Of a stretch of DNA of 64,000 nucleotides, positions 17,787 through 46,371 are shown piece by piece. Numbering within the stretch: position 1 is the first letter of the stretch; each line of letters begins with the position of its first letter. The notes beneath the pieces are model-generated. The model ran no database searches. It worked only from the letters and a program-made list of their open reading frames with translations, and was not told where the DNA came from. A program made the translations under genes and the position numbers. Where the stretch lies: positions 124,001 to 188,000 of IMG/VR virus record IMGVR_UViG_3300008448_000001; one strand, 5' to 3'.

Positions 17787-18521
17787 ATGATGAACGATTA
17801 TTTAGAAGACGAATTTCGCCCGGCCTTTCAGACGTGGCAGGCCGATAAGACGCCAACCGGTAATGCCGCCTTTTTGAAAGCGATCGACCCTGTCATTAAC
17901 CAGGGCCTTCAAGCTTACGGTGACGACAGCCCTTTGCTGCGAAGCCGCGCAAGGTTATTGGCCTTAGACGCTGCGAACAAGTACGATCCTAAAAGGTCTA
18001 GGCTGCGGTCGCACATTGTTACAAATATGCAGGGACTCAGGCGGATATCTCGTCAACAAAACCAGATTGTCAACGCTCCCGAGCGTATTGTGCTTGAAAA
18101 CCACAAGCTTCGGTCGGCTACGCAAGAGCTTGCCGATGAGCTGGGGCGAGAACCAACGGATGCAGAGCTTTCCGATTTCATGCGGGTTTCGATTCCGCGT
18201 ATCGCCAAGATAAGGAAGTACCAGCCGGGATTCAGCACGGGTCAAGCCGAAAGTCCGGAATCAAATTTTGAAAGCATGGCCAGCAGGCTTCCTGGCGACA
18301 CCGGTGCCTCGGATCTCTGGTTACAGGTGGTGCATCAAGATTTAGATCCGATTGACCAGCAAATTTTAGAAATGACTCTCGGTATGAATAACAGGCGTAA
18401 GTTTTCCAACCTAGAGATCGCAAAAGCGCTGAACCGAACGCCAGCGGCTATTACGCAGCGGAAAGAAAAAATCCAACGTCTTTTAGACCAAGAACAAGCT
18501 CTTTCACCTTTTATCTCGTAA
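17787..18521 (+). CDS. Sigma-70 family RNA polymerase sigma factor
   Basis: Region 2 (AANKYDPKRSRLRSH), region 3 (ELGREPTDAELS), region 4 HTH (FSNLEIAKALNRTPAAITQRK). Confidence 0.85.
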   Translation: MMNDYLEDEFRPAFQTWQADKTPTGNAAFLKAIDPVINQGLQAYGDDSPLLRSRARLLALDAANKYDPKRSRLRSHIVTNMQGLRRISRQQNQIVNAPERIVLENHKLRSATQELADELGREPTDAELSDFMRVSIPRIAKIRKYQPGFSTGQAESPESNFESMASRLPGDTGASDLWLQVVHQDLDPIDQQILEMTLGMNNRRKFSNLEIAKALNRTPAAITQRKEKIQRLLDQEQALSPFIS

Positions 18522-18990: not shown

Positions 18991-19478
18991 TGTATTTTTC
19001 TGGAAGTGTTCAGCAATACAAAGGGAAAACAGTCGATTTTCTCATGTACGATGGGGCGAAACCCTCCGGTGACACGCAAGTCTTGCCTGCACTCGTACAG
19101 GAAGGTCAAAGCGGAGCGTTGATAACTGGCCCGGCTAAGCTGGCTCAACGATTTTTGCTCGAGCTGCTTACCGATAAGGGTTCGCTGCAGTACGACATTA
19201 ATCGCGGCACTTTTTTCATGACGCAGATCCGGAGCGGGTTAGCCCGGACGTCCGCCGACCTGTTTCAAATTTTCGCAGCTAGCGAACTGGACTTGCGAAA
19301 CAATTTACGCTTAGAAGATGACACCTCTTTTCCAGACGACGAGCGGTATGCTTCTTCGGAGCTTTTGGATGCCTCTTTCATAGGGGATGCGATTTACCTT
19401 AGAATACAGCTCAACAGCGTGGCTGGTGAGTCGCGAGAAGTTCTGTTTCCACTACGAATCCCGGCGGTTCAGCTATGA
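18990..19478 (+). CDS. gp25-like baseplate wedge / sheath initiator
   Basis: ITGPAKLAQRFLLELLTDKGS...RGT motif; precedes baseplate J. Confidence 0.7.
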   Translation: MYFSGSVQQYKGKTVDFLMYDGAKPSGDTQVLPALVQEGQSGALITGPAKLAQRFLLELLTDKGSLQYDINRGTFFMTQIRSGLARTSADLFQIFAASELDLRNNLRLEDDTSFPDDERYASSELLDASFIGDAIYLRIQLNSVAGESREVLFPLRIPAVQL

Positions 19479-21142
19479 CTCTAACCTATTCCGACTTTGA
19501 AATCTCCGATCTTTCGCAATTGGATGCAGCCGATGTGCAACAGACGCTGCTGCGGACTATTGCGCAGCTGCAAGCGTTGAATCCGACGTTGGATTTACGC
19601 CGAGGAGCTTTCCGCGACACCATTGCTTACTTGCAGTCAGTTTTGGGTACTGCCGCTCGCGTAAACTTGGAGCGGTACCAGTCTGCAAGAAGTCTACAAC
19701 GCATTCAAGAGGATCCGACGCTCGCTGACGAAACTGTGGTCAGCGAAGTGCTTTCCAACTGGGGTATTGTGCGAAAGACCGGCACCAAGGCAAGCGGGCC
19801 GGTCACGATCGAACTTTCAGCACTTCGACCGTTAACGATACCGCAAAACAGCGTGTTTGAAGCTAACGGCTTCCAATACTTGGCCACGGCGACTTTTATC
19901 GGAAGAATATCGGCTGCCCAAATACTGGGGAGCAACGACCGGCTGCTGGTTCCACTTAGCAACGGCAACTACGCTTTCACGATCGAGGTAGAAGCCGTGG
20001 ATATCGGTGCCGACAGGAAGCTGAATGCAGGCGACCTAATAGTCCCCAACCGCGCGGTCGTTAACTACGTCACAAGCTATGCCACGTCTTCTTTCGAGGA
20101 CGGAACCAACACCGAGACAAACGAAGAGCTTATTAACGAGTTGCAGCTGGGTGTCGCGGCAAAAACGCTCTCGAACCGCACGAACATGCGCGCCTACTTG
20201 CGAAGTCTGCCGCAGTTCGAGTCGGTCACAAATCAATCCATCGTCGGTTGTGGCGATCCCGAAATGCTGCGGGACAAACACACCATCTTCCCGACGCTTA
20301 CCGGCGGTAGGGTAGACTGGTACATACGCGGGCAATCTGCGTTGCAACGAAAAACGGTTGCAGTCGTGGCCACCTGCATGTCGGTATCAACGCTTACAGG
20401 AACAAGTGAGTGGCAGTTTGCTGTTCCGGCGACAACTCTTCCCGGGTTTTACGAGGTGGACAAGATACGCAAGGCAACCGACTCTGCTGTCGTGTCAGGC
20501 TTCGGTATCGTATCGGACACGCGTTACACCGCGTTACCTGCAAGCGGTTTCTCCCCGGACATTGCAACAGCAGAGGAGAGCGCATATTCCGCTTTCCAGT
20601 CCGCAATTATCCTTTTCACAGATACGGTCACATCGGTTGCAGATTTAGCCGTCGGTCAGACCGCAGAGTATGTTTACGAGATAACGGGCACGCCACATGT
20701 CCGTGAACTGCAGGATCTTGTTTCCAGCCGAGATATCCGGCACTACGGCGCCGATGCCTTGATCAAAGCCCCTGTCCCGTGCTTTGTCAGCGTGACTCTT
20801 ACGATAAACAAGGCTGCTGACGATGTTTCTCCGTCGCTAGAGCCTATTCGGTCCGCCATTGTGACGGCGATTAACTCCGTCGACTTCCAAGGCGTGTTAC
20901 CTGGTTCTTTGATCGTGGATACCGTGCACAACTACCTGCAAGGTCGATTGAACGTCACGGAACTGGATCTTTTGGGTCGGATTCGCATGCCGGACGGCAC
21001 CATCAAGTATTTACGCAGCGATGACGCCTTGATAATACCAGAACTTCCTGGAAAAATGGTAACCTCCAAGACAGTTCAGTTTTTTGCCGAAGCGATAGAC
21101 GTAAACTTGAACGTAATCTCCTCAATACCGGTTGCAACCTAA
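19475..21142 (+). CDS. Baseplate J-like protein
   Basis: WGIVRKTGTKASGPVTI, IEVEAVDIG, GTNTETNEEL motifs. Confidence 0.85.
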   Translation: MTLTYSDFEISDLSQLDAADVQQTLLRTIAQLQALNPTLDLRRGAFRDTIAYLQSVLGTAARVNLERYQSARSLQRIQEDPTLADETVVSEVLSNWGIVRKTGTKASGPVTIELSALRPLTIPQNSVFEANGFQYLATATFIGRISAAQILGSNDRLLVPLSNGNYAFTIEVEAVDIGADRKLNAGDLIVPNRAVVNYVTSYATSSFEDGTNTETNEELINELQLGVAAKTLSNRTNMRAYLRSLPQFESVTNQSIVGCGDPEMLRDKHTIFPTLTGGRVDWYIRGQSALQRKTVAVVATCMSVSTLTGTSEWQFAVPATTLPGFYEVDKIRKATDSAVVSGFGIVSDTRYTALPASGFSPDIATAEESAYSAFQSAIILFTDTVTSVADLAVGQTAEYVYEITGTPHVRELQDLVSSRDIRHYGADALIKAPVPCFVSVTLTINKAADDVSPSLEPIRSAIVTAINSVDFQGVLPGSLIVDTVHNYLQGRLNVTELDLLGRIRMPDGTIKYLRSDDALIIPELPGKMVTSKTVQFFAEAIDVNLNVISSIPVAT

Positions 21143-21143
21143 A

Positions 21144-22067
21144 ATGCCAAAGAAAGTCAGTGGTAAGTCGGAAGTCGTCAGAATTTTAACGAAATCCGAC
21201 ATGGCGACGTCAAAAACGCGCCAAAACAAGCAAGCTATCACGTTTGCCACCGATTACTTGGTTTTTTTCGGCTATTTGACCGTCGAACTGCTGAAAAGCG
21301 TGAGTATGGACGATATTCACGCTGGAATTAAGGTTTTTCAACGATATTTTGGCATAAAAGCAGACGGAATGCTCACCGAGGAGACACTTCGCGCCATGCA
21401 GGTTCCTCGCTGCGGTTGCCCGGACAAGTTGGACAAATCCAACGGAAAGCACGTAGAATTCTTGCGTGCTGCCGAAGTTGCAGCTGAAAGACGTGATCGA
21501 TGGAACAAAACAGGTTTGACTTACTTTGTTGCAGACTACGTCGGAGGCAAAATACCTAAATCCGAGCAACGCCGCATTTTCCAGGAAGCCTTCAAGGCTT
21601 GGGACGACGTGTGCGGTTTGGACATTTCCGAAAGTAAGGACGTCGAAACCACGGACATCGTCATCACCACAGGGAAAGGCCTTCAACATCAGTTTGATGG
21701 AAAAGGTGGGACGCTCGCTTGGGCTTACATGCCAAGAGGCGACAACGAAAAGCTACTGATGCGTTTCGACTTGGAAGAAACCTGGGTGGCAAACAAAGGC
21801 GAGCGGGGTATACTGTTATCTAACGTTGCATGCCACGAGTTCGGCCATCTGCTTGGGCTACTCCATTCGGATAGGAACCAGGCCTTGATGGCACCGTACT
21901 ACAACCCGTTCGTCGGAACACCACAATCGGTCGATGACATCTCTCGAATACAGAAGCTTTACGGGCCCAACCAAAACCCAGAGAAGCTCAAGTCGAACAT
22001 TGTTCAAACCAAAAATACCATCGAGGTAAAGTTACAACCGGGTCAGAAGTTAATCGTTACCAATTGA
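21144..22067 (+). CDS. Matrixin (M10A matrix metalloprotease) with PGBD-like prodomain
   Basis: FQRYFGIKADG prodomain, PRCGCPD cysteine switch, FDGKGGTLAWA, HEFGHLLGLLH zinc motif, ALMAPYY Met-turn. Confidence 0.93.
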   Translation: MPKKVSGKSEVVRILTKSDMATSKTRQNKQAITFATDYLVFFGYLTVELLKSVSMDDIHAGIKVFQRYFGIKADGMLTEETLRAMQVPRCGCPDKLDKSNGKHVEFLRAAEVAAERRDRWNKTGLTYFVADYVGGKIPKSEQRRIFQEAFKAWDDVCGLDISESKDVETTDIVITTGKGLQHQFDGKGGTLAWAYMPRGDNEKLLMRFDLEETWVANKGERGILLSNVACHEFGHLLGLLHSDRNQALMAPYYNPFVGTPQSVDDISRIQKLYGPNQNPEKLKSNIVQTKNTIEVKLQPGQKLIVTN

Positions 22068-22077
22068 AAGGAAGTTT

Positions 22078-22419
22078 ATGCTTGCTGAACTTACGCTGGA
22101 TTTAGAGACGCTGGTCAACGCTGTAAAGGCTGCCGCAGCTGTCGGTCTTTTGGGTGCCGCAGCTTTTTTCAGTTACCGGCATTTCGCCCCGAGACGCAAA
22201 GTGAATGCGAACGCGTTCCGTGAAGAATACAAACGAAAGGACTCCGGTCGCAGCAGCGATGCGCCGCCTCCGGTAGGTTTTGCGGAACACTTGCAGATCA
22301 TAGAAAACACGGCTCCAAACGCGGGACCGGAAGTTTGGTGGAGCTACGCAAAGGGCGAGCTCACCGAGGCAGAAGTCGCGATAGCCGAGGCCAAGCTGGC
22401 CACGCACAACAAACAATAA
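22078..22419 (+). CDS. Membrane protein, one N-terminal TM
   Basis: Hydrophobic AAAAVGLLGAAAFF followed by basic residues. Confidence 0.65.
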   Translation: MLAELTLDLETLVNAVKAAAAVGLLGAAAFFSYRHFAPRRKVNANAFREEYKRKDSGRSSDAPPPVGFAEHLQIIENTAPNAGPEVWWSYAKGELTEAEVAIAEAKLATHNKQ

Positions 22420-22430
22420 GGGCAATCTTG

Positions 22431-22817
22431 ATGAATACTGCACGGATCGCAGGCGAAGAAAATACACCCAGCTTCCCGTGGGCCATTTTGGTTTGCGGTT
22501 TGCTGGGTGTTTTGTTATTGGTTCCGACCAGCTGGTTTTCGCCAAACCGAAAAACGCTAAATGCGGATTTAGCGAATGAAGCTTTTGAAACCTACGAAAG
22601 TCTTTGGCGAATCCACCAAGGAAAAGCTGCCGACAGGTTAAGCACAGGCGAACTGCAAACTGAACAAGAAGTCTGGGAGTTTCAAGCCGCCGGGCAAGAA
22701 CCTGCTCGCAAGCTTGCTTTCGAAAAACTGGCCCGAGCCGAGGCCGACTACTTCAAAAACAAAGGCGGCTGGTCCAAAGAGTCGCACGAGTCCCTGTTAC
22801 GGAGCTATGCAAAATAA
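22431..22817 (+). CDS. Membrane-anchored protein
   Basis: N-terminal TM (WAILVCGLLGVLLLV) then helical domain; TAATG coupling to peptidase. Confidence 0.65.
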   Translation: MNTARIAGEENTPSFPWAILVCGLLGVLLLVPTSWFSPNRKTLNADLANEAFETYESLWRIHQGKAADRLSTGELQTEQEVWEFQAAGQEPARKLAFEKLARAEADYFKNKGGWSKESHESLLRSYAK

Positions 22818-23773
22818 TGATTTTTACGAGTTACAATTTCGAGCGAGAAGATCGCAAGTACTTGAAGTCGCTGCCTGTTTTACCGATGCAAAGTAGTGTG
22901 TGGCGGTCTTTCCGGCGGCCCTCCGAAGTGGCTATCGACTGGCACCGCGAGGAAAATCAGTTTCAGATCGGAAGTTGCCAAGGCAACTCGCTTTCCTCGG
23001 TACTAGAACGCTGCGCTTTCGTGGCCGGCAAGAAGGTGCAGCTCTCCAGAATCTTTGCGTACCTGGCAACACAGAAGATCGACGGGCTTCTCGGGTCTGA
23101 CAACGGGTCAACGGTTTCCGGCGGCGCGAAGCTGGCGATAGAGACCGGGTGTCCGCTGGAGAAGTTGACAGGGTACCCTCGGGCATACCCTGGCCGAGCC
23201 GAACGCAACGAGATTTTGAGTGAAGCTAATTACAAGGCGGGTGCTGAGTACAAGGCAAAATCTGCGTGGCAGGTTTCTCCCGATCACGACGAATTACTTG
23301 ACTTCATTGGTGGCGGGGGTGCCATCAACTTCGGTATTCGTTACGGGGGTTCGACAATACCCTCCGACCGAGTGATCCGTCGTTTCGTTCCAGGTCGCGG
23401 CGGTCACGCCATGTGCATCCTAGGCTACACCCGTGACGGCGACCTTCGTGCAATGAATTCGCACGGGGATGGGCAGTACTTGATCACGCCGAGCGCTTGG
23501 AAGGCCATGCTTGCTGACAGTTGGACTACTGCGATCGGCCTTATGGGATCCAAAGAGCCTGTGCCTGTAGATTGGTACAGTAATTCGCCATACTTCAAGA
23601 TAACGGAAAAGTCCGCCGAAGTCGAAGCGGAAGAAGAGCGAGAGCATCTGGCGGAAGAAGAGCGAGAGCATCTGCTCGAGTTACTCCACATGCATGAGGC
23701 GGACAGTCACGAAGAACCGACGAATGAGGCAGATGACTACGAGGAGTTTGACGATGAAGAAATTGGTAGCTAG
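22817..23773 (+). CDS. Papain-like cysteine peptidase (C1 family)
   Basis: NQFQIGSC (oxyanion Gln and catalytic Cys), GHAMCILGY (His), MNSHG (Asn); acidic tail. Confidence 0.85.
   Translation: MIFTSYNFEREDRKYLKSLPVLPMQSSVWRSFRRPSEVAIDWHREENQFQIGSCQGNSLSSVLERCAFVAGKKVQLSRIFAYLATQKIDGLLGSDNGSTVSGGAKLAIETGCPLEKLTGYPRAYPGRAERNEILSEANYKAGAEYKAKSAWQVSPDHDELLDFIGGGGAINFGIRYGGSTIPSDRVIRRFVPGRGGHAMCILGYTRDGDLRAMNSHGDGQYLITPSAWKAMLADSWTTAIGLMGSKEPVPVDWYSNSPYFKITEKSAEVEAEEEREHLAEEEREHLLELLHMHEADSHEEPTNEADDYEEFDDEEIGS
23627..23674 (+). repeat. 24 bp exact tandem duplication (AEEEREHL x2)
   Basis: GCGGAAGAAGAGCGAGAGCATCTG twice. Confidence 0.9.
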
Positions 23774-24359
23774 TTTTTTTACCGCCGCTTTACTGTTCTT
23801 GCTAGGGTGCTCACCTTCACCGCAACCGTTGAAAGACGATCTCGTTGAACGCTTCAACGCTGCGGTCACGGAATCCATCCAACAGTCCCACAGCGAGACA
23901 ATGTCGGAGTTGCAAAGTTACCGTTCGACACTGGAACGTATCGAACAAGCCGTCAACGATCTTCAAGCGAAGGCGAAAGAGCCGCAAGCGAATACAGTGC
24001 TTGCAAAGCCTGTGCAAGCGGCTAACGTACGCGTTGACGCTCCGACATTTTCAAACGGGAGCGTAACACGCATGCCGGGCTCAAACTGGAACGTAGAAGG
24101 TGACTGGAACTACACACTCGTTGAGCTTGCGGATCACCTTCGGCAAGTTCACGGTTTGAACGTAGACGGAAAAACCATGACCGAACTGCAAGCCATGCAC
24201 GATAATTTGCATAACGGCTACTCGGCTTATGGCTCGCAGATTCGATCCGTGAACGCTGCCCCTGTGACTCAATACTACGCAACAAACCGAGCCCCGACAG
24301 TTTTTCGCAGAAATCGTACCTACAGCACATGCCCGCAAGGGCAACCGTGTCCCCAATAA
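23754..24359 (+). CDS. Lipoprotein with coiled coil and His-rich domain
   Basis: GAGGAG RBS; MKKLVASFFTAALLFLLG-C lipobox; HLRQVHG...MHDNLHNG; ends CPQGQPCPQ. Confidence 0.8.
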   Translation: MKKLVASFFTAALLFLLGCSPSPQPLKDDLVERFNAAVTESIQQSHSETMSELQSYRSTLERIEQAVNDLQAKAKEPQANTVLAKPVQAANVRVDAPTFSNGSVTRMPGSNWNVEGDWNYTLVELADHLRQVHGLNVDGKTMTELQAMHDNLHNGYSAYGSQIRSVNAAPVTQYYATNRAPTVFRRNRTYSTCPQGQPCPQ

Positions 24360-24647: not shown

Positions 24648-25001
24648 ATGGATTGGGAAAAGACGGCGACGGCATTCTGCGCTTCGCGCAACCTGGACGA
24701 TTTAACCTACATGCAAGCCGTAGGCAAAAATCGTAGCCGGGAAATATTTCGCATTGAAAAGGAGCGGGCAGACGTTCGCAGGGCAATGGACGCGGTCAAA
24801 CAAGCTTGGGAGGAAAACCCAAACGCTAATCGCGCTCAACTTGAAAAGAAGGCCTACAAGTTCATCACGGGCGGCGTCATTCTAACGCTATTACTGCAAG
24901 TTCTGCTGTCGGCTACAATGAAGCTTGCTATCGATTACTTTCTAGACAAGCTATTCCAAGAAAAAGCCGATGCCGCAACTTTACAAGTATCCTCAGAATG
25001 A
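24648..25001 (+). CDS. Membrane protein (possible holin-like)
   Basis: GAGGA RBS; one hydrophobic segment GGVILTLLLQVLLSA; holin role is a guess. Confidence 0.55.
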   Translation: MDWEKTATAFCASRNLDDLTYMQAVGKNRSREIFRIEKERADVRRAMDAVKQAWEENPNANRAQLEKKAYKFITGGVILTLLLQVLLSATMKLAIDYFLDKLFQEKADAATLQVSSE

Positions 25002-26529
25002 CTTCGATAGACCTGACTCGCTGCTGAGCGTACTGGGTAGCTTTTGGGCTTCGCTTTACCAGGGTAACGGCCTGGTTTCGGATATCAGTAACGTTGTCGG
25101 GCAGCTATACCAGCAAGTCAACACGCAGTTCCTTGAGCTAGTAAACAGCGTTTCACGAAAAAACGTGCCTGTCTATCATCAAGACGACTGGTACGCAGTG
25201 CAGGTAAGACGTTCAGCTCTTAACACCGACATAAGTTTGCTTGCGCGTTATCTCACGGGAACAGCCTACAAGTACAAAAGCCAAGCTGAACTTTTCTACG
25301 GACAAATACCGACTTCTCGTTATTACGCGATCAGTAAGCCTCGCGAGCTTGTAGAGTGCTCCGTCGTATTTGAACAGGTCACGCAGCCTACGGTGCAGAT
25401 GCTTAACGGCATCGACTTCTGGCTGGAAGAAAACACAGTTGTTTTTGTCGCTAACCCGTTCGACAACCCGGACATTCCGAAGAAGGAAATATTGAACGCG
25501 GTTGGGGAGATCGTTGACACTGAAATTACCTTGTGGTTTTATCGATCTAAGTGGGACTGGAATTACATTTACGACCAGTTCGGTTACGCTCTGAATTTGC
25601 CTATGCGATCCAGCGCAGGCTACAAGACGCTGGTGAACGCTGTACTCGAAAGCTTTAACGAGGGGACCAGCGCTCGTTCGCAGCAACAAGCTTTGGCCGC
25701 TGTCTTTGGCATACCTCTAGTGATCGATGCAACGGAAGTTGTCGAAGCCATTGCCACCGACGCAACAGGTTTGAAAGTGATAACGAACTCAAACGTGTAT
25801 GCATATCCTTCCACGGCAACGCCTGTCGTTTCCGTCGGGCAGACGGTTTACGCAGGCCAGTCGCTCACTGACACGTTCGAAATCATTGAGCTTAACCGGG
25901 GATTCGACGTTAATTGCGGCGTCGACAGTTTAACGATGGACACCGGTATGCTGACGAAGGGGTATCACGACGGCCTCGTTTTTTCGAACGCAAACGTCCC
26001 GGTACAAACAGAACTTGATGTCGACGGCTATACCAAGGTCACCTGGGATTTGGGCGGCTTTCCGCGAGACGTTTCGAAGTTTTGGGAGGATGTCCACGCA
26101 AACGGCATAGCTAAGAACGAAACATTAGCGATGCTGCTAGACGTGCGGGAGAACCCTGTCGGCCAGCCGACGGCTGACTCTTTGCCTGCGGAGATCAACC
26201 CGTTGAAGTTTCTGGTAGACAACCTGCTCCGGTTCAACGTTTTCATCGTGAAAGTTAAACCTGGAAGCAAACTGCAGAATAGGCTAGAATTTGTGCCTGT
26301 GTCGCAGCTTCGAAAGGTGATGCCACCGCACACGTTGATGATCTTGCTGGTGGACTTAGCGTATGCCGACAACCCTATCATCATGGAAGGTTACGGTACG
26401 CCGGAGTCGCCAGGGTACACTGAAAGCTTTGAAAACTTCCAGTGTTTAACCGTTTCCGAGTCGCTTGGATACGAAGCATACGTAACTGAAGAGTCAAAAA
26501 TAAAATCAATCAGTGGAAGGTGCGTTTAA
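24970..26529 (+). CDS. Baseplate wedge / structural protein
   Basis: C-terminal LRKVMPPHT resembles the PAH motif of gpI-type wedge proteins; synteny. Confidence 0.55.
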   Translation: MPQLYKYPQNDFDRPDSLLSVLGSFWASLYQGNGLVSDISNVVGQLYQQVNTQFLELVNSVSRKNVPVYHQDDWYAVQVRRSALNTDISLLARYLTGTAYKYKSQAELFYGQIPTSRYYAISKPRELVECSVVFEQVTQPTVQMLNGIDFWLEENTVVFVANPFDNPDIPKKEILNAVGEIVDTEITLWFYRSKWDWNYIYDQFGYALNLPMRSSAGYKTLVNAVLESFNEGTSARSQQQALAAVFGIPLVIDATEVVEAIATDATGLKVITNSNVYAYPSTATPVVSVGQTVYAGQSLTDTFEIIELNRGFDVNCGVDSLTMDTGMLTKGYHDGLVFSNANVPVQTELDVDGYTKVTWDLGGFPRDVSKFWEDVHANGIAKNETLAMLLDVRENPVGQPTADSLPAEINPLKFLVDNLLRFNVFIVKVKPGSKLQNRLEFVPVSQLRKVMPPHTLMILLVDLAYADNPIIMEGYGTPESPGYTESFENFQCLTVSESLGYEAYVTEESKIKSISGRCV

Positions 26530-27122
26530 TGACTGCCAAGTTTTGTACGGGCGTGGCTGGACGAGTTCGAGCTTACAAGGTTGAAGATTTAACGCTGCCT
26601 CCGTTTAAGTGGGCTCCGACAACGGACTTTAAGCCTAACTTGATTCTTTACCAGTGGGCAACTATCGCAGCAAAGCTGTTGACGAGCGGAGATAGCCGGT
26701 ACCGGATTAGCGGCATGTACTTGGAGTTTGAAAACACGGACAATCCTGGCGACCCGGTAAGTCCGCCTACCTTCGATCGCACGCGAGATGTCAGCTACTA
26801 CAACGGTCTCTCGCTTAGCTCGAACCGCGACTATCTGCGTATTCCGGTCATCTCGGCGGAGCTCAGCTCGGACGGCGAAGGTCTTACGGATAACCGGATG
26901 TCCTATTTCGCAAGAAGCAGCGGCTCGGTCGGCGTGCACGGGAAACCTTTTTCTGCCGCAGCGAACTCGGTCGTGTTCGGTGGTAGCCTTGTGGCACTTG
27001 TTGACGCCACGGATTTTACGCAAGACTTGCTTTATAGCAGCTGGTATTACACCACGGCGGATCAGCAACAAAAATTGCCTTCCAGCCAGATCGGAATTGA
27101 ATGGCAAACCACTTTGAGCTAG
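26529..27122 (+). CDS. Baseplate / tail-fibre attachment protein
   Basis: N-terminal PNLI and C-terminal KLPSSQIGIEWQ pattern of collar-type proteins; synteny. Confidence 0.5.
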   Translation: MTAKFCTGVAGRVRAYKVEDLTLPPFKWAPTTDFKPNLILYQWATIAAKLLTSGDSRYRISGMYLEFENTDNPGDPVSPPTFDRTRDVSYYNGLSLSSNRDYLRIPVISAELSSDGEGLTDNRMSYFARSSGSVGVHGKPFSAAANSVVFGGSLVALVDATDFTQDLLYSSWYYTTADQQQKLPSSQIGIEWQTTLS

Positions 27123-27132
27123 GGAGCAGCAA

Positions 27133-28950
27133 ATGGGATTAAATCGTTTCATTCAGTACATAAAAGAGAACGAGCCCGTCGCACCGGGAACTGCCAACCG
27201 GCCCATGAGCCAGCTGGACCAAAATCTCAAGTACATGATAGGCCTGCTCGAGGCCGCCAACATCGGATCAACCGTTTACGCTAGATCGCAAACCGTTGTT
27301 TCCACGATCCAAGTCGGACAGCCTGTGTTCTTTAACCCTGCAACGTCAAGGTTCGAGCCCGCTTTCGCTACAAGCGAGTCCGATTCCGCCACAGGGTACC
27401 TTGTCGTACCGAACCAATCCCAAGTGTGGGGCGTGGTCGCAGAGAAGCTTAACTCGACGCTGGCCGACATCTTGCTTTTCGGCTACGCGAAAATCGACAT
27501 AACGGCTGCGGTCGGAACTGACTTGGACAACGACGGGAATGTCCCGCCTGGATTATGGTATCTTTCTGGCGTTAGCGCCGGGAAGCTAACCCGGCAGTCG
27601 CCGCCTTTGTCGATACCGGTCTGCAAGACAGATAACGCCGGTAACGTGTACGTTAATCCTTCTTTCGTCGATTTTCTGGAAAACCACAGGCATTACGTCT
27701 TCGACTTGACCGCGATGCCTGCCGGGCAGGTTACGCCTCCCGACGCTGGCGATCCGCACGTGATCACTTCTGCAGACGCGGACTTGCCCGGGTGGTTACC
27801 GGCTGACGATGTCGTGTTTGAAGGGAAAGCACCGACCGGAGCCAAGTTCGGCTATAACTTGGCCGCCGATGCGTCGCTGCAGAGCGTGTTCCCGCCTGTT
27901 CCCCTGCAGTCTGCTTCGGTAATCATGCAGCGACCCAGCATCTACGACACGCTTGCGGAGCGTAAGTGGTACGGGCAGCAGCTGCTCTCAGATCTTGTTG
28001 TCGTTAACCGCGACGGTATCTGGTGGATGAGCGATTGTTATGACGAAGTTCCATGGGCAACGGATCTCGACACTACTGTCTCGATGAGCAGTGTTTACAC
28101 CGAGTGCGACCCTGCCTCCAAGCCTATAAGCATCAAACTTTATTTTACTCGAGTAGGCTTTGCCACTGACAACAGCTCGGTAACAAGTCTGCGATCGCTG
28201 GATCCTAGGCTGAAAGTTCTTTGCGCAGGCAAAACAGACGTTGCTTTCTCCGGCGATCTCGACATCGACTTGGACTTGTCGCTGATGAACGGCCCTGCGA
28301 ACGTGGCCGGTTACTCGGTATTGAAAACGTTTGACCCTGTCACCAACGAGTTCAGCAGCGGAAAAGTTGTTGAAGGCGTGTATGCCACGTCTGCGAACGT
28401 CTTGCTCAGTGGCGACACTAGCTTTATCGCTGGCGGCAACACGTATTACCAGGGGAAGATTGGGGTTGGGGTGCTCAGCCAGCCTTCTCGCGAGTTGTCG
28501 AGTCAGCTGGTTCGGTTGGAGGGCGTTACGGAAGAAAGTTATCCGGTTTTGTATCTCGGGATGCCGAACGATACGGCGACAAGCTACGTCGTCAAGTTCG
28601 AGGTACCCGGAGACGCACCGGCTAACTCTCAGTTCCGTTTTCGGCCTCGGATACTGGGCAAGGCAGCGGGCACACTGCCGCAGCTTGCGGTCAGCTACTT
28701 TAAGACAGGCAGACCCGTGGACGGCTTAAACATACCGATCACGGTGAGCCAATCTTATGTCGCGCTAACCATTGTTACCGTGGCCACGGTAACGGCAAAC
28801 CAAGCCGTTGAAGCACTAAGCAGCGCCGTCGAGGTGGATCCGGGAGACATCGTGTACCTTCGCGTGACACGCAACCCGGGCGACCCGAGCGACAACTACA
28901 CTGGCGAAGTCGGCATCATGCAGCAGATCGGAGTCTTAACGTCTTCCTAA
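27133..28950 (+). CDS. Virion structural protein (tail fibre base-like)
   Basis: EPVAPGTANRPMSQL N-terminal motif typical of fibre proteins; 605 aa. Confidence 0.55.
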   Translation: MGLNRFIQYIKENEPVAPGTANRPMSQLDQNLKYMIGLLEAANIGSTVYARSQTVVSTIQVGQPVFFNPATSRFEPAFATSESDSATGYLVVPNQSQVWGVVAEKLNSTLADILLFGYAKIDITAAVGTDLDNDGNVPPGLWYLSGVSAGKLTRQSPPLSIPVCKTDNAGNVYVNPSFVDFLENHRHYVFDLTAMPAGQVTPPDAGDPHVITSADADLPGWLPADDVVFEGKAPTGAKFGYNLAADASLQSVFPPVPLQSASVIMQRPSIYDTLAERKWYGQQLLSDLVVVNRDGIWWMSDCYDEVPWATDLDTTVSMSSVYTECDPASKPISIKLYFTRVGFATDNSSVTSLRSLDPRLKVLCAGKTDVAFSGDLDIDLDLSLMNGPANVAGYSVLKTFDPVTNEFSSGKVVEGVYATSANVLLSGDTSFIAGGNTYYQGKIGVGVLSQPSRELSSQLVRLEGVTEESYPVLYLGMPNDTATSYVVKFEVPGDAPANSQFRFRPRILGKAAGTLPQLAVSYFKTGRPVDGLNIPITVSQSYVALTIVTVATVTANQAVEALSSAVEVDPGDIVYLRVTRNPGDPSDNYTGEVGIMQQIGVLTSS

Positions 28951-35104: not shown

Positions 35105-37882
35105 ATGGCGCCTACGACGCAGTGCCCACAGGGACCGCAGTCACCCGTGTTTGACATCGTCAAATGCGACGTGCCTTGCATTTTCCCTATTCCAGGTGGA
35201 AACTGGCTGATAAACCCACAGGTTCCGCAAGCCCCAGCGGATATCTTTGATTGTCCGTCGCTGCCTGTTCCGTTGCTCGACCCGGATCCAATTTGCCCAA
35301 TTCTTTCCGCCCAAGACGACATCACCACCAACGTGGTACCGATCGGAAGCGAAAGAGTTATTTTTACAGTGACAAAGGGTCAATGCTGCGATTACGTGTT
35401 GAACTTGCAGGTAGACTTTCCCTGTCCGGAAATAACGGGAGAGGCGAACGTCACTACCGTAGGACCTGGCGGAGCACCCTTTGCCAATTTAAACGTCAAC
35501 AAGTCTGGCGATTGCTCCTTTGACATTCAGCTGAACATCGGCTTGCCCAGCCCGCAGCTTGGACCGCAAGGACCGCAAGGACCGCAAGGCCCACAGGGTG
35601 CAGAAGGCCCACAAGGTGCAGAAGGGCCGCAGGGTGCAGAAGGCCCACAAGGACCGCAGGGGCCGGCTGGCCCACAGGGCCCACAAGGCCCGCAAGGTTT
35701 AATCGGACCACAAGGTTTAATCGGACCACAAGGTTTAATCGGACCGCAAGGAGCGGAGGGACCTCAAGGTACGGCAGGCCCGCAAGGTACACCCGGCCCT
35801 CAAGGCCCAATAGGCCCTGACGGTAATCCCGGGCCCGACGGCAATCCTGGGCCTGACGGTAACCCTGGACCGGACGGCAACCCCGGTCCTGACGGCAATC
35901 CCGGAGACCAAGGACCCCAAGGCGACCGCGGACCCCAAGGTCACCGTGGCCCGCAAGGTTACCCTGGCTACACGGGGGCCACCGGCTATCGTGGACCACA
36001 AGGGTATCGAGGTCCGCAAGGTTATCGCGGCCCTCAAGGATATCGCGGAGCGCAAGGCTACAGAGGTCCGCAAGGCTACAGAGGTCCGCAAGGTTACGAG
36101 GGTCCGCAAGGGCCACAGGGTCCCCAAGGAAAACGCGGCCCACAAGGCTATCGCGGACCACAGGGCCACCGTGGGCCACAGGGTTACCGTGGTGCGGAAG
36201 GCCCGCAAGGCCCTTGTTGCGAGGGATCGACAGGTACCACTGGGCCAACTGGTCCAACCGGTCCTACAGGTCCAACCGGGCCTACGGGTCCAACCGGGCC
36301 GACCACGCCTACTTACGAGTTACTCATCAGTTGGGAATTCAACGATCAACTGACGCCCGAGGTTGACCCGCCAGCCCCGTTAAAGTACGCCGGAGACAGC
36401 GAACTTTTCTACGCGGACCCCGACGCGGAATCGGCAAGGCAACAAGCTTTCTCGTTGCACGGTCAGATTTACTTCAACAACGCTTCGCTGGCTGCGGTCA
36501 CGCACATCTATGTCGAGAAATCAAACTACAACAGCGTAGACATATCCGCGTTGCTCGCCACAGCTAAACCCACCGACACGTTAAAAACTCGCGTGATGTC
36601 CGACGTCAACAAGTTCGGCATTTATCGAGTCTTGGCCGTCACGGAAGAAACAACGCTTTTCGACTACACAGTTGAAGCGATAACAACTAACGGCGCTTAC
36701 ACGTTGCTGGATCAGGTCGTTCTCGAAATTCAACCCACAGGTGCCCAGGGTGCAACGGGTGCGACCGGCCCAACGGGTAGCGGTGTGCCGGCGGGCGGAT
36801 TGACCGGGCAGGTGCTGGCGAAAAACACTGACACAAATTACGACACGGTTTGGATAGACAACTACGCCAAGGAACTACGCGTCACCGTCAAGAACATGTC
36901 CGGCGGTGTCATCAACAAAGGCCAAGCCGTTATGGCCACCGGGGCGACAGGGGATACGATCGAAGTTACTCTGGCAAACGCGGACGGTACTGTTCTTCCA
37001 CGTTACATGCTCGGCATAGCATCTGAAAACATAGCCAGTGAAGCCTCGGGTTACGTTACCCTGATTGGCGACATGCAACACCTGAATACCCTCAGCTACA
37101 CTGTGGGTACGGTGCTGTGGTTGAATCCGAGCACGCCTGGCGGGTTAACGGCGACAGAACCGGCGGCGAGCACTATACGCATGCCGGTGGCCATCGTTAC
37201 GCGGCAGCATGTCGAGAGTGGTCGAATTTATGTCCGCATGTATTTGCAGCAGACGGCTTTGCATGAGCTTTTTGACGTTAAGTTCAGCAGCCTGCAAAAC
37301 GGTAATTACCTTCGCTACGATAGCACGCTTTCGGCTTGGAAGAACGATGCAACCAGTCCCACGGGGGCAACCGGAACACAGGGCGCTACAGGGGCCACGG
37401 GCCCAGGCACAACAGTAAATGCGACTGCGACAAACACCGACGCCACGTTCTATCCCGTGTTCGTCGCAGCCGCTGGGAGTAACCAGACACCGAGTGTCGA
37501 CACAACGGCACCGTCGCTGAGCTACAACCCGAGCACCGATTTGCTCAACGTTGGCGGTTTGACCGCGAACAAGTACGCAACAGGTACCGGCATAGTTTCG
37601 GTGGTAACGGGTACAACTCGATCGCTGAGCAGTGCGGACAACGGTATTGTCTTAGAGTGCAGCAGCAGTTCGGCAGTGACAGTCACGGTTCCCACCGGGC
37701 TTCCAGTGGGTTTCACACTTACAATAATTCAAACTGGAACAGGTCAAATATCGTTTAGCGCGTCTGGGACCACGATAAACAACCGTCAAAGCCACACCAA
37801 GACCGCCGGGCGATGGGCCGTGGTATCGCTGATTCAACGTAGTACTAACAACTTCATTTTGGCTGGGGACACTGCCGCATAA
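35105..37882 (+). CDS. Collagen-like tail/capsid fibre protein
   Basis: Long Gly-X-Y tract flanked by Cys-rich N-terminus and several fibre-type domains. Confidence 0.85.
35561..36303 (+). repeat. Collagen Gly-X-Y coding repeats in blocks ([30 protein letters not shown])
   Basis: 9 and 18 bp periodic repeats with synonymous variation. Confidence 0.95.
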
Positions 37883-44012: not shown

Positions 44013-44857
44013 ACACATGAAACCTGAAGAACTAGCAACGATTTTAACTGAGCACGCGAAGTGGTTAAAGGATGAAGGTGGCAAAAGGGCCAACCTGCAC
44101 AGGGCCGAACTTCGCGGGGCCAACCTTGGTGGGGCCGAACTTGCCATGGTCAAACTTGCCGGGGCCGACCTTCGCGATGCCAACCTTCGCGGGGCCAACC
44201 TTGGTGGGGCCGAACTTGCCATGGTCAAACTTGCCGGGGCCGACCTTCGCGATGCCAACCTTGCCGGGGCCAACCTTCGCGGGGCCAACCTTCGCAGGGC
44301 CTTCCTTTTAGGAGCCAGCCTTATCGGGGCCGACCTGGAAGGGGCCAACCTTTACAAGGCCAACCTTATCGGAGCCAACCTTGCCGGGGCCAACCTTCGC
44401 GGGGCCAACCTTTACAAGGCCAACCTTATCGGAGCCAACCTTGACGGGGCCGACCTTCGCGGGGTCAACCTTCGCGGGGCCAACCTTCGCCGGGCCAATC
44501 TTGAAGGGGCCGACCTTCGCGGGGCCAACCTTAACGGCGCTGACCTTGACGATGCTAATCTTACTGGGGCAAGAATCGACACCCTGGTTTGTCGCATGGA
44601 TATCGATCGTTGGTCGATCTGCGTTTACGCGGACCGAACATCCATCGGTTGCAAAACACAACCTAATGAAAACTGGTTGGCTTGGACATCGGAAAGCGAA
44701 GAGATCAAGAAGATGCACTCCGATGCGGCTTCTTGGTGGGCAACGCACGGCGAGTTTATCAAAGCAGCAATCCGCCACGTGATAAAAAATTCGAAAGGCA
44801 ATAACACATGAAACCTGAAGAACTAGCAACGATTTTAACTGAGCACGCGAAGTGGTT
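44013..44857 (+). repeat. 54 bp exact direct repeat at 44013-44066 and 44804-44857
   Basis: ACACATGAAACCTGAAGAACTAGCAACGATTTTAACTGAGCACGCGAAGTGGTT twice. Confidence 0.92.
44017..44811 (+). CDS. Pentapeptide repeat protein
   Basis: Long A(N/D)LxG repeat tract plus C-terminal domain (SIGCK...WL...WW). Confidence 0.92.
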   Translation: MKPEELATILTEHAKWLKDEGGKRANLHRAELRGANLGGAELAMVKLAGADLRDANLRGANLGGAELAMVKLAGADLRDANLAGANLRGANLRRAFLLGASLIGADLEGANLYKANLIGANLAGANLRGANLYKANLIGANLDGADLRGVNLRGANLRRANLEGADLRGANLNGADLDDANLTGARIDTLVCRMDIDRWSICVYADRTSIGCKTQPNENWLAWTSESEEIKKMHSDAASWWATHGEFIKAAIRHVIKNSKGNNT

Positions 44858-46234: not shown

Positions 46235-46308
46235 GTGACCGTAGCTCAATAGGTTAGAGCAGGAGACTCATAATCTCTCGGTTCCCGGTTCAAGTCCGGG
46301 CGGTCACA
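46235..46308 (+). tRNA. tRNA with CAT anticodon, probably tRNA-Ile2 (otherwise elongator Met)
   Basis: Acceptor GTGACCG/CGGTCAC, D arm GCTC/GAGC, anticodon loop CTCATAA, T arm CCCGG-TTCAAGT-CCGGG, discriminator A, CCA not encoded. Confidence 0.92.
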
Positions 46309-46371
46309 CTGCTGACAACTGCTACGTAGCAGCTGTTACCTTGTTTGTTAGACCCTTTCACAGGAGTTGAT

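What the first reader, a model, noticed from the sequence alone, without database searches (positions are those of the whole stretch)
21144..22067. Complete MMP-style zymogen with cysteine switch in a phage tail operon
Seen: PGBD-like prodomain, PRCGCPD (21405-21425), basic ERRDR segment before the catalytic domain, FDGKGGTLAWA, HEFGHLLGLLH (21834-21866), Met-turn; no signal peptide and no hemopexin domain. Known: PRCGxPD is the latency switch of animal and plant matrixins; many bacterial M10 proteins lack it. Inference: an activatable phage protease, relevant to the origin of MMP prodomains from peptidoglycan-binding domains.
Basis: partly seen in the sequence, partly recalled or inferred. 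Interest (0 to 1): 0.72.

Follow-up and report, generated by a model that had tools for sequence, protein, structure and literature searches.

The report
Latent MMP-like protease in jumbo phage
A 205-kb freshwater phage encodes a complete look-alike of an animal matrix-metalloproteinase zymogen, and it belongs to a large, undescribed phage-only branch of that enzyme family that has lost the second (structural) zinc site and probably attacks the host cell envelope.

Summary
Window 21144-22067 (+) encodes a 307-aa protein with a PG_binding_1-like prodomain, PRCGCPD, an intact HEFGHLLGLLH zinc site and a Met-turn. It has no signal peptide and no hemopexin domain. Its best sequence and fold matches are human proMMP zymogens.

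The gene starts one base after a Baseplate_J gene in a complete 204.8-kb phage genome with terminal repeats.

It is not a one-off. At least 172 clusters (50% identity) match at E<=1e-30, and 90 IMG/VR contigs encode relatives. Free-living bacteria carry the same prodomain-switch-catalytic layout.

The new point is that the phage proteins form their own clade (support 0.998). In it the MMP structural-zinc histidines are replaced by Trp193 and Arg/Lys207, the S-loop is shortened, and the switch usually reads Cys-Gly-Cys.

Six genomes of this phage clade lack five common endolysin families. The gene heads a block of small membrane proteins, a papain-like peptidase and a lipoprotein.

Best reading (inferred): a protease held latent in the cytoplasm and released at lysis to cut the host envelope. 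A baseplate-borne entry enzyme is the main rival. Activity, latency, substrate and host are untested.

The parts
21144..22067 (+). Whole gene: 307-aa MMP-like zymogen (P0001), stop codon included
   Evidence: ORF and translation. Pfam PF00413 at 1.2e-33 plus PF01471 at 1.2e-6. proMMP matches by sequence and by fold.
21144..21242 (+). Residues 1-33: hydrophilic N-terminus with one predicted helix (7-17); no signal peptide
   Evidence: AF2 secondary structure. Hydropathy. Weakly conserved, 23% mean identity.
21243..21404 (+). Residues 34-87: PG_binding_1-like helical prodomain
   Evidence: Pfam PG_binding_1, residues 34-85. pLDDT 90-93. Aligns with the proMMP-9 prodomain. F42, G43, Y44, Q66 and G75 are invariant in A1.
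21405..21425 (+). Residues 88-94: cysteine switch PRCGCPD (Cys90 = 21411-21413; second Cys92 = 21417-21419)
   Evidence: R89, C90, G91 and D94 are invariant in A1. C90 is present in 256 of 258 family members and C92 in 174 of 258. 97% mean identity.
21426..21497 (+). Residues 95-118: linker with an extra helix (101-115), His103 and the non-conserved ERRDR. It is longer than in proMMPs. This is the presumed site of any propeptide removal.
   Evidence: It appears as an insertion relative to MMP-10, -1 and -9. pLDDT is 67-77. His103 is present in 118 of 258 family members, and the segment is absent in all 79 cellular homologues.
21498..21971 (+). Residues 119-276: M10 catalytic domain
   Evidence: Pfam profile positions 1-159 of 159. 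38-41% identity to MMP-13 catalytic-domain structures.
21720..21764 (+). Remodelled S-loop: Trp193 (21720-21722) and Arg207 (21762-21764) stand where MMPs have two structural-zinc histidines
   Evidence: Alignments to MMP-10, -1 and -9. W in 238 of 258 and R/K in 214 of 258 phage-family proteins, against His in 76 of 79 cellular homologues at both positions. Segment print-out.
21834..21866 (+). Residues 231-241: HEFGHLLGLLH catalytic zinc site (His231, Glu232, His235, His241), followed by Ser242
   Evidence: Invariant in 258 of 258 family members.
21882..21902 (+). Residues 247-253: Met-turn ALMAPYY (Met249)
   Evidence: M249 in 250 of 258. Aligns with ALMYP of MMPs.
21972..22064 (+). Residues 277-307: short family-specific C-terminal tail with two predicted beta-strands
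   Evidence: AF2 strands 286-288 and 293-295. Loosely conserved V.L..GQ.L.V pattern.
19475..21142 (+). Upstream neighbour: Baseplate_J-like wedge protein. Its stop codon ends one base before the MMP start.
   Evidence: Pfam and PHROG hits. The bpJ-then-MMP order is kept in 13 related viral contigs, down to 41% bpJ identity.
22078..22419 (+). 113-aa protein with one N-terminal transmembrane helix (holin-like by shape only)
   Evidence: Hydropathy. Conserved in L003-L009. No Pfam family.
22431..22817 (+). About 128-aa protein: N-terminal transmembrane helix plus a helical C-terminal part (i-spanin-like by shape only)
   Evidence: Hydropathy and the ATG at 22431. No Pfam family.
22817..23773 (+). 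318-aa papain-family (C1) cysteine peptidase without a signal peptide
   Evidence: PDB 3ois cysteine protease at 2.3e-7. Atlas clusters Peptidase_C1, mostly Uroviricota. Conserved in L003-L009.
23754..24359 (+). About 201-aa predicted lipoprotein (signal peptide with lipobox LLGC)
   Evidence: No Pfam family.
24648..25001 (+). 117-aa protein with a C-terminal transmembrane helix. It is the last gene of the variable block before the conserved tail genes at 24970-28950.

Best explanation
The gene encodes a latent zinc endopeptidase of the matrixin (M10) family. It belongs to a phage-specific subfamily.

Shown or directly read from sequence:
- It sits in a late structural operon, with no signal peptide, so the product accumulates in the cytoplasm.
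- Its N-terminal half is a PG_binding_1-like helical prodomain. That domain places the PRCGCPD peptide in the active-site cleft of an intact HExxHxxGxxH / Met-turn catalytic domain, as in proMMPs.

Inferred by homology: the Cys90 thiolate binds the catalytic zinc and keeps the enzyme off. A protease made in the cytoplasm needs this, because otherwise it could cut phage and host proteins during assembly.

Hypothesis for the role:
- The enzyme is the first gene of an envelope-directed (lysis-type) cassette that is embedded in the baseplate module.
- When the neighbouring small membrane proteins breach the inner membrane, the zymogen reaches the wall and the prodomain docks it on murein.
- The switch then opens. 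One route is oxidation of the vicinal Cys90-Gly-Cys92 pair outside the reducing cytoplasm. The other is cleavage in the 95-118 linker, either autolytic or by the adjacent papain-like peptidase.
- The active enzyme cuts peptide or protein components of the host envelope and so promotes lysis.

Unlike canonical MMPs, it should carry a single zinc.
For: Identity as a zymogen:
- Pfam M10 at 1.2e-33 and PG_binding_1 at 1.2e-6.
- proMMP-10, -1, -9 and -3 are the best PDB matches. By sequence they score about 1e-27, spanning prodomain to catalytic domain. By fold, TM normalised to the target is 0.82 over about 250 columns.
- Catalytic residues are invariant in 258 of 258 family members and Cys90 is present in 256 of 258.
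- The switch peptide is the most conserved segment.

Distinct phage subfamily:
- Trp193 and Arg/Lys207 replace the two structural-zinc histidines, and the S-loop is shortened. 76 of 79 cellular homologues keep the canonical HGD...LAHA...HFD pattern.
- The bipartition has 0.998 support.
- The Cys-Gly-Cys form of the switch occurs in about 72% of long-prodomain phage proteins against 6% of cellular ones.

Envelope or lysis role:
- It is the only PG_binding_1 protein in the genome.
- A Pfam survey of 237 ORFs found no canonical lysin family.
- Phage_lysozyme, SLT, Amidase_2, Peptidase_M15_4 and Glyco_hydro_19 were each not found in the five genomes searched, out of six clade genomes in all.
- The genes that follow encode two single-pass membrane proteins, a C1 peptidase, a lipoprotein and a tail-anchored protein. 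In distant clade members they encode signal-peptide proteins.
- Short secreted variants of the same subfamily exist on other viral contigs, so the site of action lies outside the cytoplasm.
- Precedent: a phage-derived metzincin in Listeria sensitises the wall to phage lysis (PMC8235301).
- From my own knowledge: P2-like phages carry their lysis genes inside the late structural operon, and phiKZ-type endolysins have an N-terminal PG_binding_1 domain ahead of the catalytic domain.
Against: - No enzymology, no latency data and no virion or expression data exist. No RNA run was listed that holds the gene.
- To my knowledge, no M10 enzyme is known to cleave peptidoglycan.
- The absence of canonical lysins is negative evidence in a genome where most ORFs have no Pfam match. 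One Pfam batch showed only 25 of its 31 families.
- The membrane proteins are 'holin/spanin-like' by shape only.
- The gene's fixed position right after Baseplate_J fits a virion enzyme equally well.
- In 13 other phage lineages the gene sits among ClpS, ClpP, RNR and methyltransferase genes, with no lysis-type context evident.
- Cellular homologues keep latency elements without the second cysteine, so Cys-Gly-Cys is not required for a switch.
- The host is unknown.
Confidence: 0.5

Rival explanations
1. Virion-borne entry enzyme. The zymogen is assembled onto the baseplate and opened during tail contraction. It then digests surface-layer protein or wall peptides locally so that the tail tube can pass, the role that lysozyme domains play in other myovirus baseplates.
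For: The start codon lies one base after the Baseplate_J stop, with no predicted terminator between them. The bpJ-then-MMP order is kept across 13 related contigs, down to 41% bpJ identity. Conserved tail genes resume at 24970-28950. A short conserved C-terminal tail could serve as a docking element.
Against: The genes directly downstream encode membrane proteins and a lipoprotein, which are not typical virion parts. In other phage lineages the homologue is not next to recognisable baseplate genes. Secreted, signal-peptide variants exist. There are no virion proteomics data.
Confidence: 0.22
2. Processing protease for the phage's own proteins. One example would be trimming of the collagen-repeat tail fibres, which would fit the collagenase kinship of MMPs.
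For: The genome encodes two long collagen-repeat proteins, one at window 35105-37879 and one at genome 119286-120821. The gene lies in the tail module.
Against: Collagen-repeat genes over the Pfam cut-off were found in only 1 of 5 other phage records that carry the protease. A 93%-complete member of the same clade has none. A murein-binding-type prodomain and secreted variants do not fit an assembly protease.
Confidence: 0.07
3. Accessory protease unrelated to the wall. It might degrade host defence or regulatory proteins in the cytoplasm. Alternatively, after lysis it might degrade extracellular or surface proteins, for example receptors on cell debris, to free progeny.
For: In other lineages the gene travels with miscellaneous accessory genes such as ClpS, ClpP and methyltransferases. 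It has a patchy, mobile distribution over unrelated phage contigs.
Against: A zinc-thiolate switch should stay closed in the reducing cytoplasm. The conserved PG_binding_1-like domain and the envelope-type neighbours point to the wall.
Confidence: 0.13
4. Non-catalytic relic. The protein would serve only as a murein-binding or structural module.
For: None beyond the lack of any activity data.
Against: His231, Glu232, His235, His241, Met249 and the calcium-site residues Asp209 and Glu212 are invariant or nearly so in 258 relatives. dN/dS for the prodomain is about 0.09.
Confidence: 0.03

Closest known systems
Vertebrate proMMP zymogens (proMMP-10 9csx, proMMP-9 8k5v/5ue3, proMMP-3 1slm, proMMP-1 1su3)
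   Same: Helical PG_binding_1-type prodomain, PRCGxPD switch, HExxHxxGxxHS zinc site, Met-turn and FDGxGG calcium loop. Identity is 30-33% over about 250 columns, and TM is 0.82 normalised to the target.
   Different: No signal peptide and no hemopexin or fibronectin modules. All four structural-zinc ligands are replaced (Lys178, Leu180, Trp193, Arg207) and the S-loop is shorter. The switch has a second cysteine. The prodomain-catalytic linker is longer, with an extra helix. There is a 31-aa C-terminal tail. The protein is made in a phage-infected bacterial cytoplasm.
Chromosomal bacterial PGBD-switch-M10 proteins (e.g. Litorimonas sp. WD9-15, Sphingomonadaceae, Microbacterium ulmi, Mycobacterium sp. 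ACS4331, Nodosilinea, Aquimarina rubra)
   Same: The same three-part layout, with a PRCG[FNVM]PD switch. They are 30-36% identical to the phage protein from the prodomain through the catalytic domain.
   Different: They keep the canonical MMP S-loop (HGD...LAHA...GD.HFD) with both histidines in 76 of 79. They rarely have the second cysteine. They fall on the other side of a 0.998-supported split. They are uncharacterised experimentally, and the recent phylogenetic study of bacterial MMPs discusses them only as possible collagen degraders (PMC12587646).
Karilysin of Tannerella forsythia (PDB 2xs4, 4r3v)
   Same: A prokaryote-associated M10 catalytic domain of MMP type. Sequence match 3e-19; fold TM 0.77 to 4r3v.
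   Different: From my own knowledge, karilysin is secreted and is kept latent by a short propeptide that uses an aspartate, not a cysteine. It has no PGBD-like prodomain.
MMPs of insect dsDNA viruses (granulo-, asco-, irido-, entomopox- and nudiviruses)
   Same: Virus-encoded M10 enzymes. They are the best matches in the viral structure library, and IMG/VR loci L073-L077 and L080 belong here.
   Different: They come from eukaryotic viruses, are 470-600 aa long with signal peptides, and keep His/His at the structural-zinc positions. They group with the cellular type.
Listeria monocytogenes Mtz-Tim pair (phage-remnant metzincin plus lipoprotein)
   Same: A phage-derived metzincin whose expression weakens the wall and enhances phage lysis, and which works with a neighbouring lipoprotein (PMC8235301). 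Here too a lipoprotein gene lies three genes downstream.
   Different: Mtz is secreted and is not described as having a cysteine-switch prodomain. I did not test homology to the present protein or between the two lipoproteins.
Modular endolysins of large myoviruses with an N-terminal PG_binding_1 domain (phiKZ gp144 type; own knowledge)
   Same: An N-terminal murein-binding module followed by a C-terminal catalytic module, with no signal peptide.
   Different: Their catalytic module is a transglycosylase or lysozyme, not a protease, and it needs no latency device.

Membership tests
Peptidase family M10 / matrixin (Pfam PF00413) | Full-length match to the family profile above the curated threshold | tested here: met
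   116.7 bits against a cut-off of 24, profile positions 1-159 of 159.
Peptidase family M10 / matrixin (Pfam PF00413) | Extended zinc motif HExxHxxGxxH followed by Ser/Thr, and a Met-turn | tested here: met
   HEFGHLLGLLHS at 231-242 and ALMAPYY at 247-253. Invariant in the family.
Canonical MMP (M10A) catalytic domain | Structural zinc site in the S-loop (His, Asp, His, His) | tested here: not met
   The aligned residues are Lys178, Leu180, Trp193 and Arg207. The family-wide pattern is Trp / Arg-Lys, against His / His in cellular homologues.
Canonical MMP (M10A) catalytic domain | Calcium-binding residues of the FDGxGG loop with the Asp and Glu of the FDxxExW segment | tested here: inconclusive
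   Asp185, Gly186, Gly189, Asp209 and Glu212 are conserved. Metal binding cannot be read from sequence, and the loop that holds the other calcium sites is shortened.
MMP zymogen | Prodomain of PG_binding_1 / three-helix type packed on the catalytic domain | tested here: met
   Pfam PF01471 at 29 bits against a cut-off of 23. The model superposes on whole proMMP-10, -9 and -3 with TM 0.81-0.84 normalised to the target.
MMP zymogen | Cysteine-switch motif PRCGxPD between prodomain and catalytic domain | tested here: met
   PRCGCPD at 88-94. Cys90 is present in 256 of 258 relatives.
MMP zymogen | Latency that is relieved by thiol modification or propeptide removal | not testable with these tools
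   Needs recombinant protein. See the next steps.
MMP zymogen | Secretory signal peptide (secreted or membrane-bound enzyme) | tested here: not met
   The N-terminus is hydrophilic. The same holds across alignment A1.
Phage endolysin / lysis enzyme | Cell-wall-binding module joined to a catalytic module, made without a signal peptide | tested here: met
   It is the only PG_binding_1 match in the genome.
Phage endolysin / lysis enzyme | Catalytic domain of a class known to cleave peptidoglycan | tested here: not met
   The domain is M10. I know of no M10 murein hydrolase, and the literature searches found none.
Phage endolysin / lysis enzyme | Adjacency to holin and spanin genes | tested here: inconclusive
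   Single-pass membrane proteins and a lipoprotein follow the gene. None matches a holin or spanin family.
Phage endolysin / lysis enzyme | No other lysin in the genome | tested here: inconclusive
   No lysin family appeared in the Pfam survey of 237 ORFs. Five lysin families were each absent from the five clade genomes searched, six genomes in all. Divergent or novel lysins cannot be excluded.
Baseplate / virion-associated hydrolase | Conserved gene order with baseplate genes | tested here: met
   bpJ-then-MMP in L002-L010, L012, L014, L018, L030 and L081. This order is not seen in 13 other lineages.
Baseplate / virion-associated hydrolase | Presence in the virion | not testable with these tools
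   No cultured phage or virion proteome exists for this clade.

The most novel reading that the evidence does not exclude
A whole clade of uncultured jumbo phages lyses its host with proteases instead of muramidases. The lead enzyme would be a single-zinc MMP whose Cys-Gly-Cys switch works as a built-in redox sensor. It stays closed while zinc-bound in the reducing cytoplasm. It snaps open by forming a Cys90-Cys92 disulfide once a holin lets the protein reach the oxidising envelope, with no activating protease needed. If so, the cysteine switch of animal MMPs would have a prokaryotic-virus counterpart in which its original logic (cytoplasm off, outside on) is plain to see.
Probability: 0.15. 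Interest if true: 0.8.

Novelty: new variant of a known kind. Interest (0 to 1): 0.55.

Why it matters
MMPs are among the most studied proteases. Their prokaryotic relatives are still treated mainly as collagen-degrading imports or exports of animal biology, and the 2025 phylogenetic study does not mention phages, the cysteine switch or murein at all (PMC12587646).

Here a large and diverse family sits in phages that infect bacteria in lakes, where animal matrix is not the target. It keeps the full zymogen design, yet it has dispensed with the structural zinc that is taken as a hallmark of the MMP catalytic domain.

This offers three things:
1. A natural minimal, single-zinc MMP scaffold for structural and folding studies.
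2. A simple bacterial-cytoplasm system in which to test how the cysteine switch works and what opens it.
3. A candidate for a protease-based lysis or entry strategy in a phage clade that lacks five common endolysin families.

It also warns against using bacterial MMP genes as proxies for animal substrates in evolutionary dating.

Tried and rejected
- Complex prediction of Baseplate_J with the protease gave 'no answer' (score 0.00).
- PHROGs: no family for the protease.
- GenBank/INPHARED phages: no tblastn match to the protease at 1e-5 and none to Baseplate_J at 1e-3. The sheath is only 27-30% identical to Vibrio phages D181, D148 and D69 and to Salmonella phage Arash.
- Host search.
  - No WhiB gene.
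  - Baseplate_J was found in 0 of 401 Planctomycetota genomes. In 401 Actinomycetota genomes the only match was the MAG contig already known.
  - The protease matched in 4 of 401 Planctomycetota genomes, and only one of those is of the phage type.
  - Weak hints towards Planctomycetota remain. PSCyt1 domains occur in neighbouring genes of two related contigs. DUF1501 occurs in another lineage. The two phage-type hits in 'cellular' bins are Planctomycetaceae and Pirellulales MAGs. I rate the host as unknown.
- The collagen-fibre processing idea was tested by co-occurrence and found weak.
- Baseplate adjacency as a general rule was rejected: neighbours in 13 other lineages show no baseplate families among the 25 most frequent Pfam hits.
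- Promoter and terminator scans around the gene are at chance level.
- Cys157/Cys230 covariation is modest (96, 64, 55 and 43; odds ratio about 2.6) and is confounded by relatedness. I make no disulfide claim.
- Expression: no RNA run was listed that holds the gene, and read laying was not used.
- The review 'Matrix metalloproteinases outside vertebrates' could not be read because it is not held. What I say about it is from memory and is not used as evidence.
- I built no tree that includes animal or plant MMPs, because no tool gave me their full sequences. The position of the phage clade relative to eukaryotic MMPs, and the root, are therefore open.
Full report
**1. What is there**

Window 21144-22067 (+) is an open frame of 307 codons. 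The ATG at 21144 lies one base after the TAA of the upstream gene. It matches the N-termini of homologues, which begin MPKK or MTKK.

Pfam finds Peptidase_M10 over the whole profile (E=1.2e-33, residues 119-274) and PG_binding_1 (E=1.2e-6, residues 34-85).

- PRCGCPD, residues 88-94
- FDGKGGTLAWA, residues 184-194
- HEFGHLLGLLH, residues 231-241
- the Met-turn ALMAPYY, residues 247-253

PRCGxPD and HExxHxxGxxH each occur once in the six frames of the whole 204.8-kb genome. The N-terminus is hydrophilic. The protein ends 31 residues after the catalytic domain, so there is no signal peptide and no hemopexin domain.

**2. It is a whole zymogen, not only a catalytic domain**

A sequence search of the PDB puts the pro-forms of human MMP-10, -1, -9 and -3 on top, at about 1e-27. 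The alignments run from the prodomain through PRCG.PD into the catalytic domain.

An AlphaFold2 model built on 26 family members has mean pLDDT 82.4 and pTM 0.81. The prodomain scores 90-93 and the switch 86-89.

Foldseek against the PDB again ranks proMMP-10, -9, -3 and -1 first. TM normalised to the target is 0.81-0.84 over about 250 columns. That is only possible if the prodomain and the catalytic domain sit against each other as in the zymogens. I could not read coordinates, so the Cys90-zinc contact is inferred, not measured.

**3. Setting**

The window is bases 124001-188000 of a 204,794-bp virus record with direct terminal repeats, rated 100% complete.
- Upstream lie a tail-sheath homologue (3440-6268) and a Baseplate_J / baseplate-wedge protein (19475-21142).
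- Elsewhere the genome encodes a large terminase, family-A DNA polymerase, RNA polymerase beta/beta'-like proteins, ribonucleotide reductase and thymidylate synthase.
- DNA runs that hold the region are labelled freshwater, lake-water, aquatic or, oddly, fungus metagenome.
- The phage is remote from cultured phages.

**4. The family**

- A word-indexed search found 256 relatives. Nearly all are about 300 aa with the same two Pfam domains, and many lie on contigs of 170-236 kb.
- An exhaustive HMMER search of 1.84 billion cluster representatives gave 6017 hits at E<=1e-3, 2131 at E<=1e-10 and 172 at E<=1e-30.
- Ninety IMG/VR contigs encode relatives.
- In 13 of them, plus one contig binned into a 'Nanopelagicales' MAG, the gene keeps its place directly after Baseplate_J. 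In these contigs Baseplate_J itself falls to 41% identity.
- In 13 other viral contigs, 150 neighbouring ORFs show ClpS, ClpP, RNR and methyltransferase families but no baseplate families. Baseplate adjacency is therefore a trait of this clade, not of the gene.

**5. What sets the phage proteins apart**

I aligned three sets: 258 metagenomic family members, 79 proteins from viral contigs, and 79 from species-representative bacterial genomes.

| Feature | Phage family | Cellular bacterial homologues |
|---|---|---|
| Catalytic His/Glu/His/His | invariant | invariant |
| Cys at switch position 90 | 256 of 258 | 53 of 79 |
| Position 193 (MMP structural-zinc His) | Trp in 238 of 258 | His in 76 of 79 |
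| Position 207 (MMP structural-zinc His) | Arg/Lys in 214 of 258 | His in 76 of 79 |
| S-loop | shortened: TG.G....FDG.GGTLAWAY.P.G....L.M[RK]FD | canonical: HGD..PFDG..GVLAHAF.PPPNGG..AGD.HFD |

The six insect-virus MMPs also have His at both positions. The S-loop segments are printed. The other two zinc ligands of human MMPs align with Lys178 and Leu180.

A FastTree of 281 non-redundant sequences puts all 48 His-type tips in one clade with 0.998 support. It puts 201 of the 209 Trp-type tips in a clade free of His-type tips.

The second cysteine of the switch (Cys-Gly-Cys) occurs in about 72% of long-prodomain phage proteins. It occurs in about 19% of short-propeptide, apparently secreted phage variants and in 6% of cellular ones.

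The switch heptapeptide is the most conserved segment of the protein, at 97% mean identity. The catalytic domain scores 59%, the prodomain 50% and the linker 37%.

**6. What it may do**

*Shown.*
- It is the only PG_binding_1 protein of the genome.
- A Pfam survey of 237 ORFs finds no canonical lysin domain. One batch displayed only 25 of its 31 families.
- Direct six-frame searches find none of Phage_lysozyme, SLT, Amidase_2, Peptidase_M15_4 or Glyco_hydro_19. Each family was searched in five of six clade genomes (G000 with G001 and G006-G008, or G001 and G006-G009). Five of the six genomes are at least 93% complete.
- The genes that follow encode a 113-aa and a roughly 128-aa single-pass membrane protein, then a papain-family C1 peptidase (PDB 3ois, 2.3e-7; Atlas Peptidase_C1 clusters), a lipoprotein with lipobox LLGC, and a tail-anchored protein. 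Conserved tail genes resume at 24970.
- In distant clade members the same slot holds signal-peptide proteins.

*Inferred.* This block is an envelope-directed, lysis-type cassette set inside the baseplate module, much as P2 carries its lysis genes inside a late structural operon (own knowledge). A protease that waits in the cytoplasm needs a lock, and a zinc-thiolate lock is stable exactly there. That would explain why the switch is the best-kept part of the protein.

*Hypothesis.* Opening by a Cys90-Cys92 disulfide in the oxidising envelope, or by cleavage in the linker (possibly by the neighbouring C1 peptidase).

A phage-remnant metzincin that sensitises the Listeria wall to phage lysis is a functional precedent (PMC8235301).

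**7. Rivals**

- A baseplate-borne entry enzyme fits the fixed gene order, and it cannot be excluded without virion proteomics.
- Processing of the phage's own collagen-repeat fibres was attractive, because the genome has two such proteins (window 35105-37879 and genome 119286-120821). However, only 1 of 5 other protease-carrying phage records has a collagen-repeat gene above the Pfam cut-off, and a clade member that is 93% complete has none.
- A wall-unrelated accessory role and a non-catalytic role are less likely, for the reasons given in the rival list.

**8. Known or new**

The fold, the switch and the domain order are those of MMP zymogens, so the kind is known. The same order also exists in many bacterial chromosomes. 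It is therefore not a phage invention, and it does not by itself inform the origin of the animal prodomain.

The viral structure library holds only unnamed 'uncultured Caudovirales phage' entries of this sort. The named viral MMPs are all from insect viruses.

Seven full-text searches found no description of phage MMP zymogens. The latest phylogenetic paper on microbial MMPs mentions neither phages nor the switch.

I therefore class it as a new variant of a known kind: a phage-specific, structural-zinc-less, signal-less MMP zymogen subfamily with a Cys-Gly-Cys switch.

**9. Limits**

- There are no activity, latency, metal, expression or virion data.
- The host is unknown, with only weak hints towards Planctomycetota.
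- The tree lacks eukaryotic MMPs and a root.
- The lysis reading rests on context and on negative evidence.

Noticed in passing
window 17787-18521 (+): A 244-aa protein inside the baseplate module matches Sigma-70 region 3 (Pfam 1e-7) and a PHROG RNA polymerase sigma factor (2.9e-10). It is conserved in all syntenic relatives. A sigma-like gene among baseplate genes is unexpected.
   Followed up: partly
genome outside the window (batch A3: genome 66802-142987) and window 18990-64000 / genome 186001-204794 (batch A4): The phage encodes RNA polymerase beta/beta'-like domains (Rpb2_6 at 7.6e-44, Rpb1_2 at 4.4e-20, Rpb1_5 at 4e-19) and an RNA polymerase alpha C-terminal domain (4.8e-11). It therefore carries parts of a multisubunit RNA polymerase. 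The exact ORFs were not assigned.
   Followed up: no
window 35105-37879 (+); also L168:11286-12821 (genome 119286-120821): Two long collagen-triple-helix-repeat proteins, presumably fibres. The 925-aa one has more than 70 G-X-Y triplets, many of them GPQ.
   Followed up: partly
window 22817-23773 (+): A papain-family C1 cysteine peptidase without a signal peptide lies two genes downstream of the MMP-like gene. It is conserved in close relatives (60-95% identity) and belongs to clusters found mostly in tailed phages. Two cytoplasmically made proteases side by side is unusual.
   Followed up: partly
window 44017-44808, 44808-45464 (+); L169:11575-12126: Three paralogous pentapeptide-repeat proteins share the N-terminus MKPEEL..IL..H.KWL.
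   Followed up: no
L036-L039, L069 (about 215 aa) and L031-L035, L040-L061 (about 195-230 aa) in IMG/VR contigs: These are short variants of the same Trp-type subfamily with Tat/Sec-like signal peptides. Some have PRCGVKD directly behind the signal peptide and no PGBD-like domain. They amount to a secreted form of the phage enzyme.
   Followed up: partly
L081:10995-12191; L010:12737-13435; neighbours in batch A5: 'Planctomycete cytochrome C' (PSCyt1) domains occur in genes next to the protease in related phage contigs (1.4e-6 and 9e-4). A DUF1501 protein (2.3e-52) occurs in another lineage. To my knowledge these families are typical of Planctomycetota, so they give a weak host hint.
   Followed up: partly
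L081 (contig JBDNFH010000027.1, 25.6 kb, in a 'Candidatus Nanopelagicales' MAG): This contig carries the same baseplate-protease gene order as the phage (bpJ 47% identical), so it is very likely a phage contig binned into a bacterial MAG.
   Followed up: partly
genome 66802-142987 (batch A3): A second putative zinc metallopeptidase (Pfam Peptidase_Mx, 1e-6), a SET-domain protein, sulfotransferases and several glycosyltransferases are encoded elsewhere in the genome. The window half also holds a heptosyltransferase (Glyco_transf_9, 4.6e-12), which suggests a lipopolysaccharide-bearing host.
   Followed up: no
window 46235-46309 (+): A single tRNA-Met (CAT) gene.
   Followed up: no
one search run table: Several of the DNA runs that hold this phage region are labelled 'fungus metagenome', alongside the lake and freshwater runs. 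The reason is unknown.
   Followed up: no
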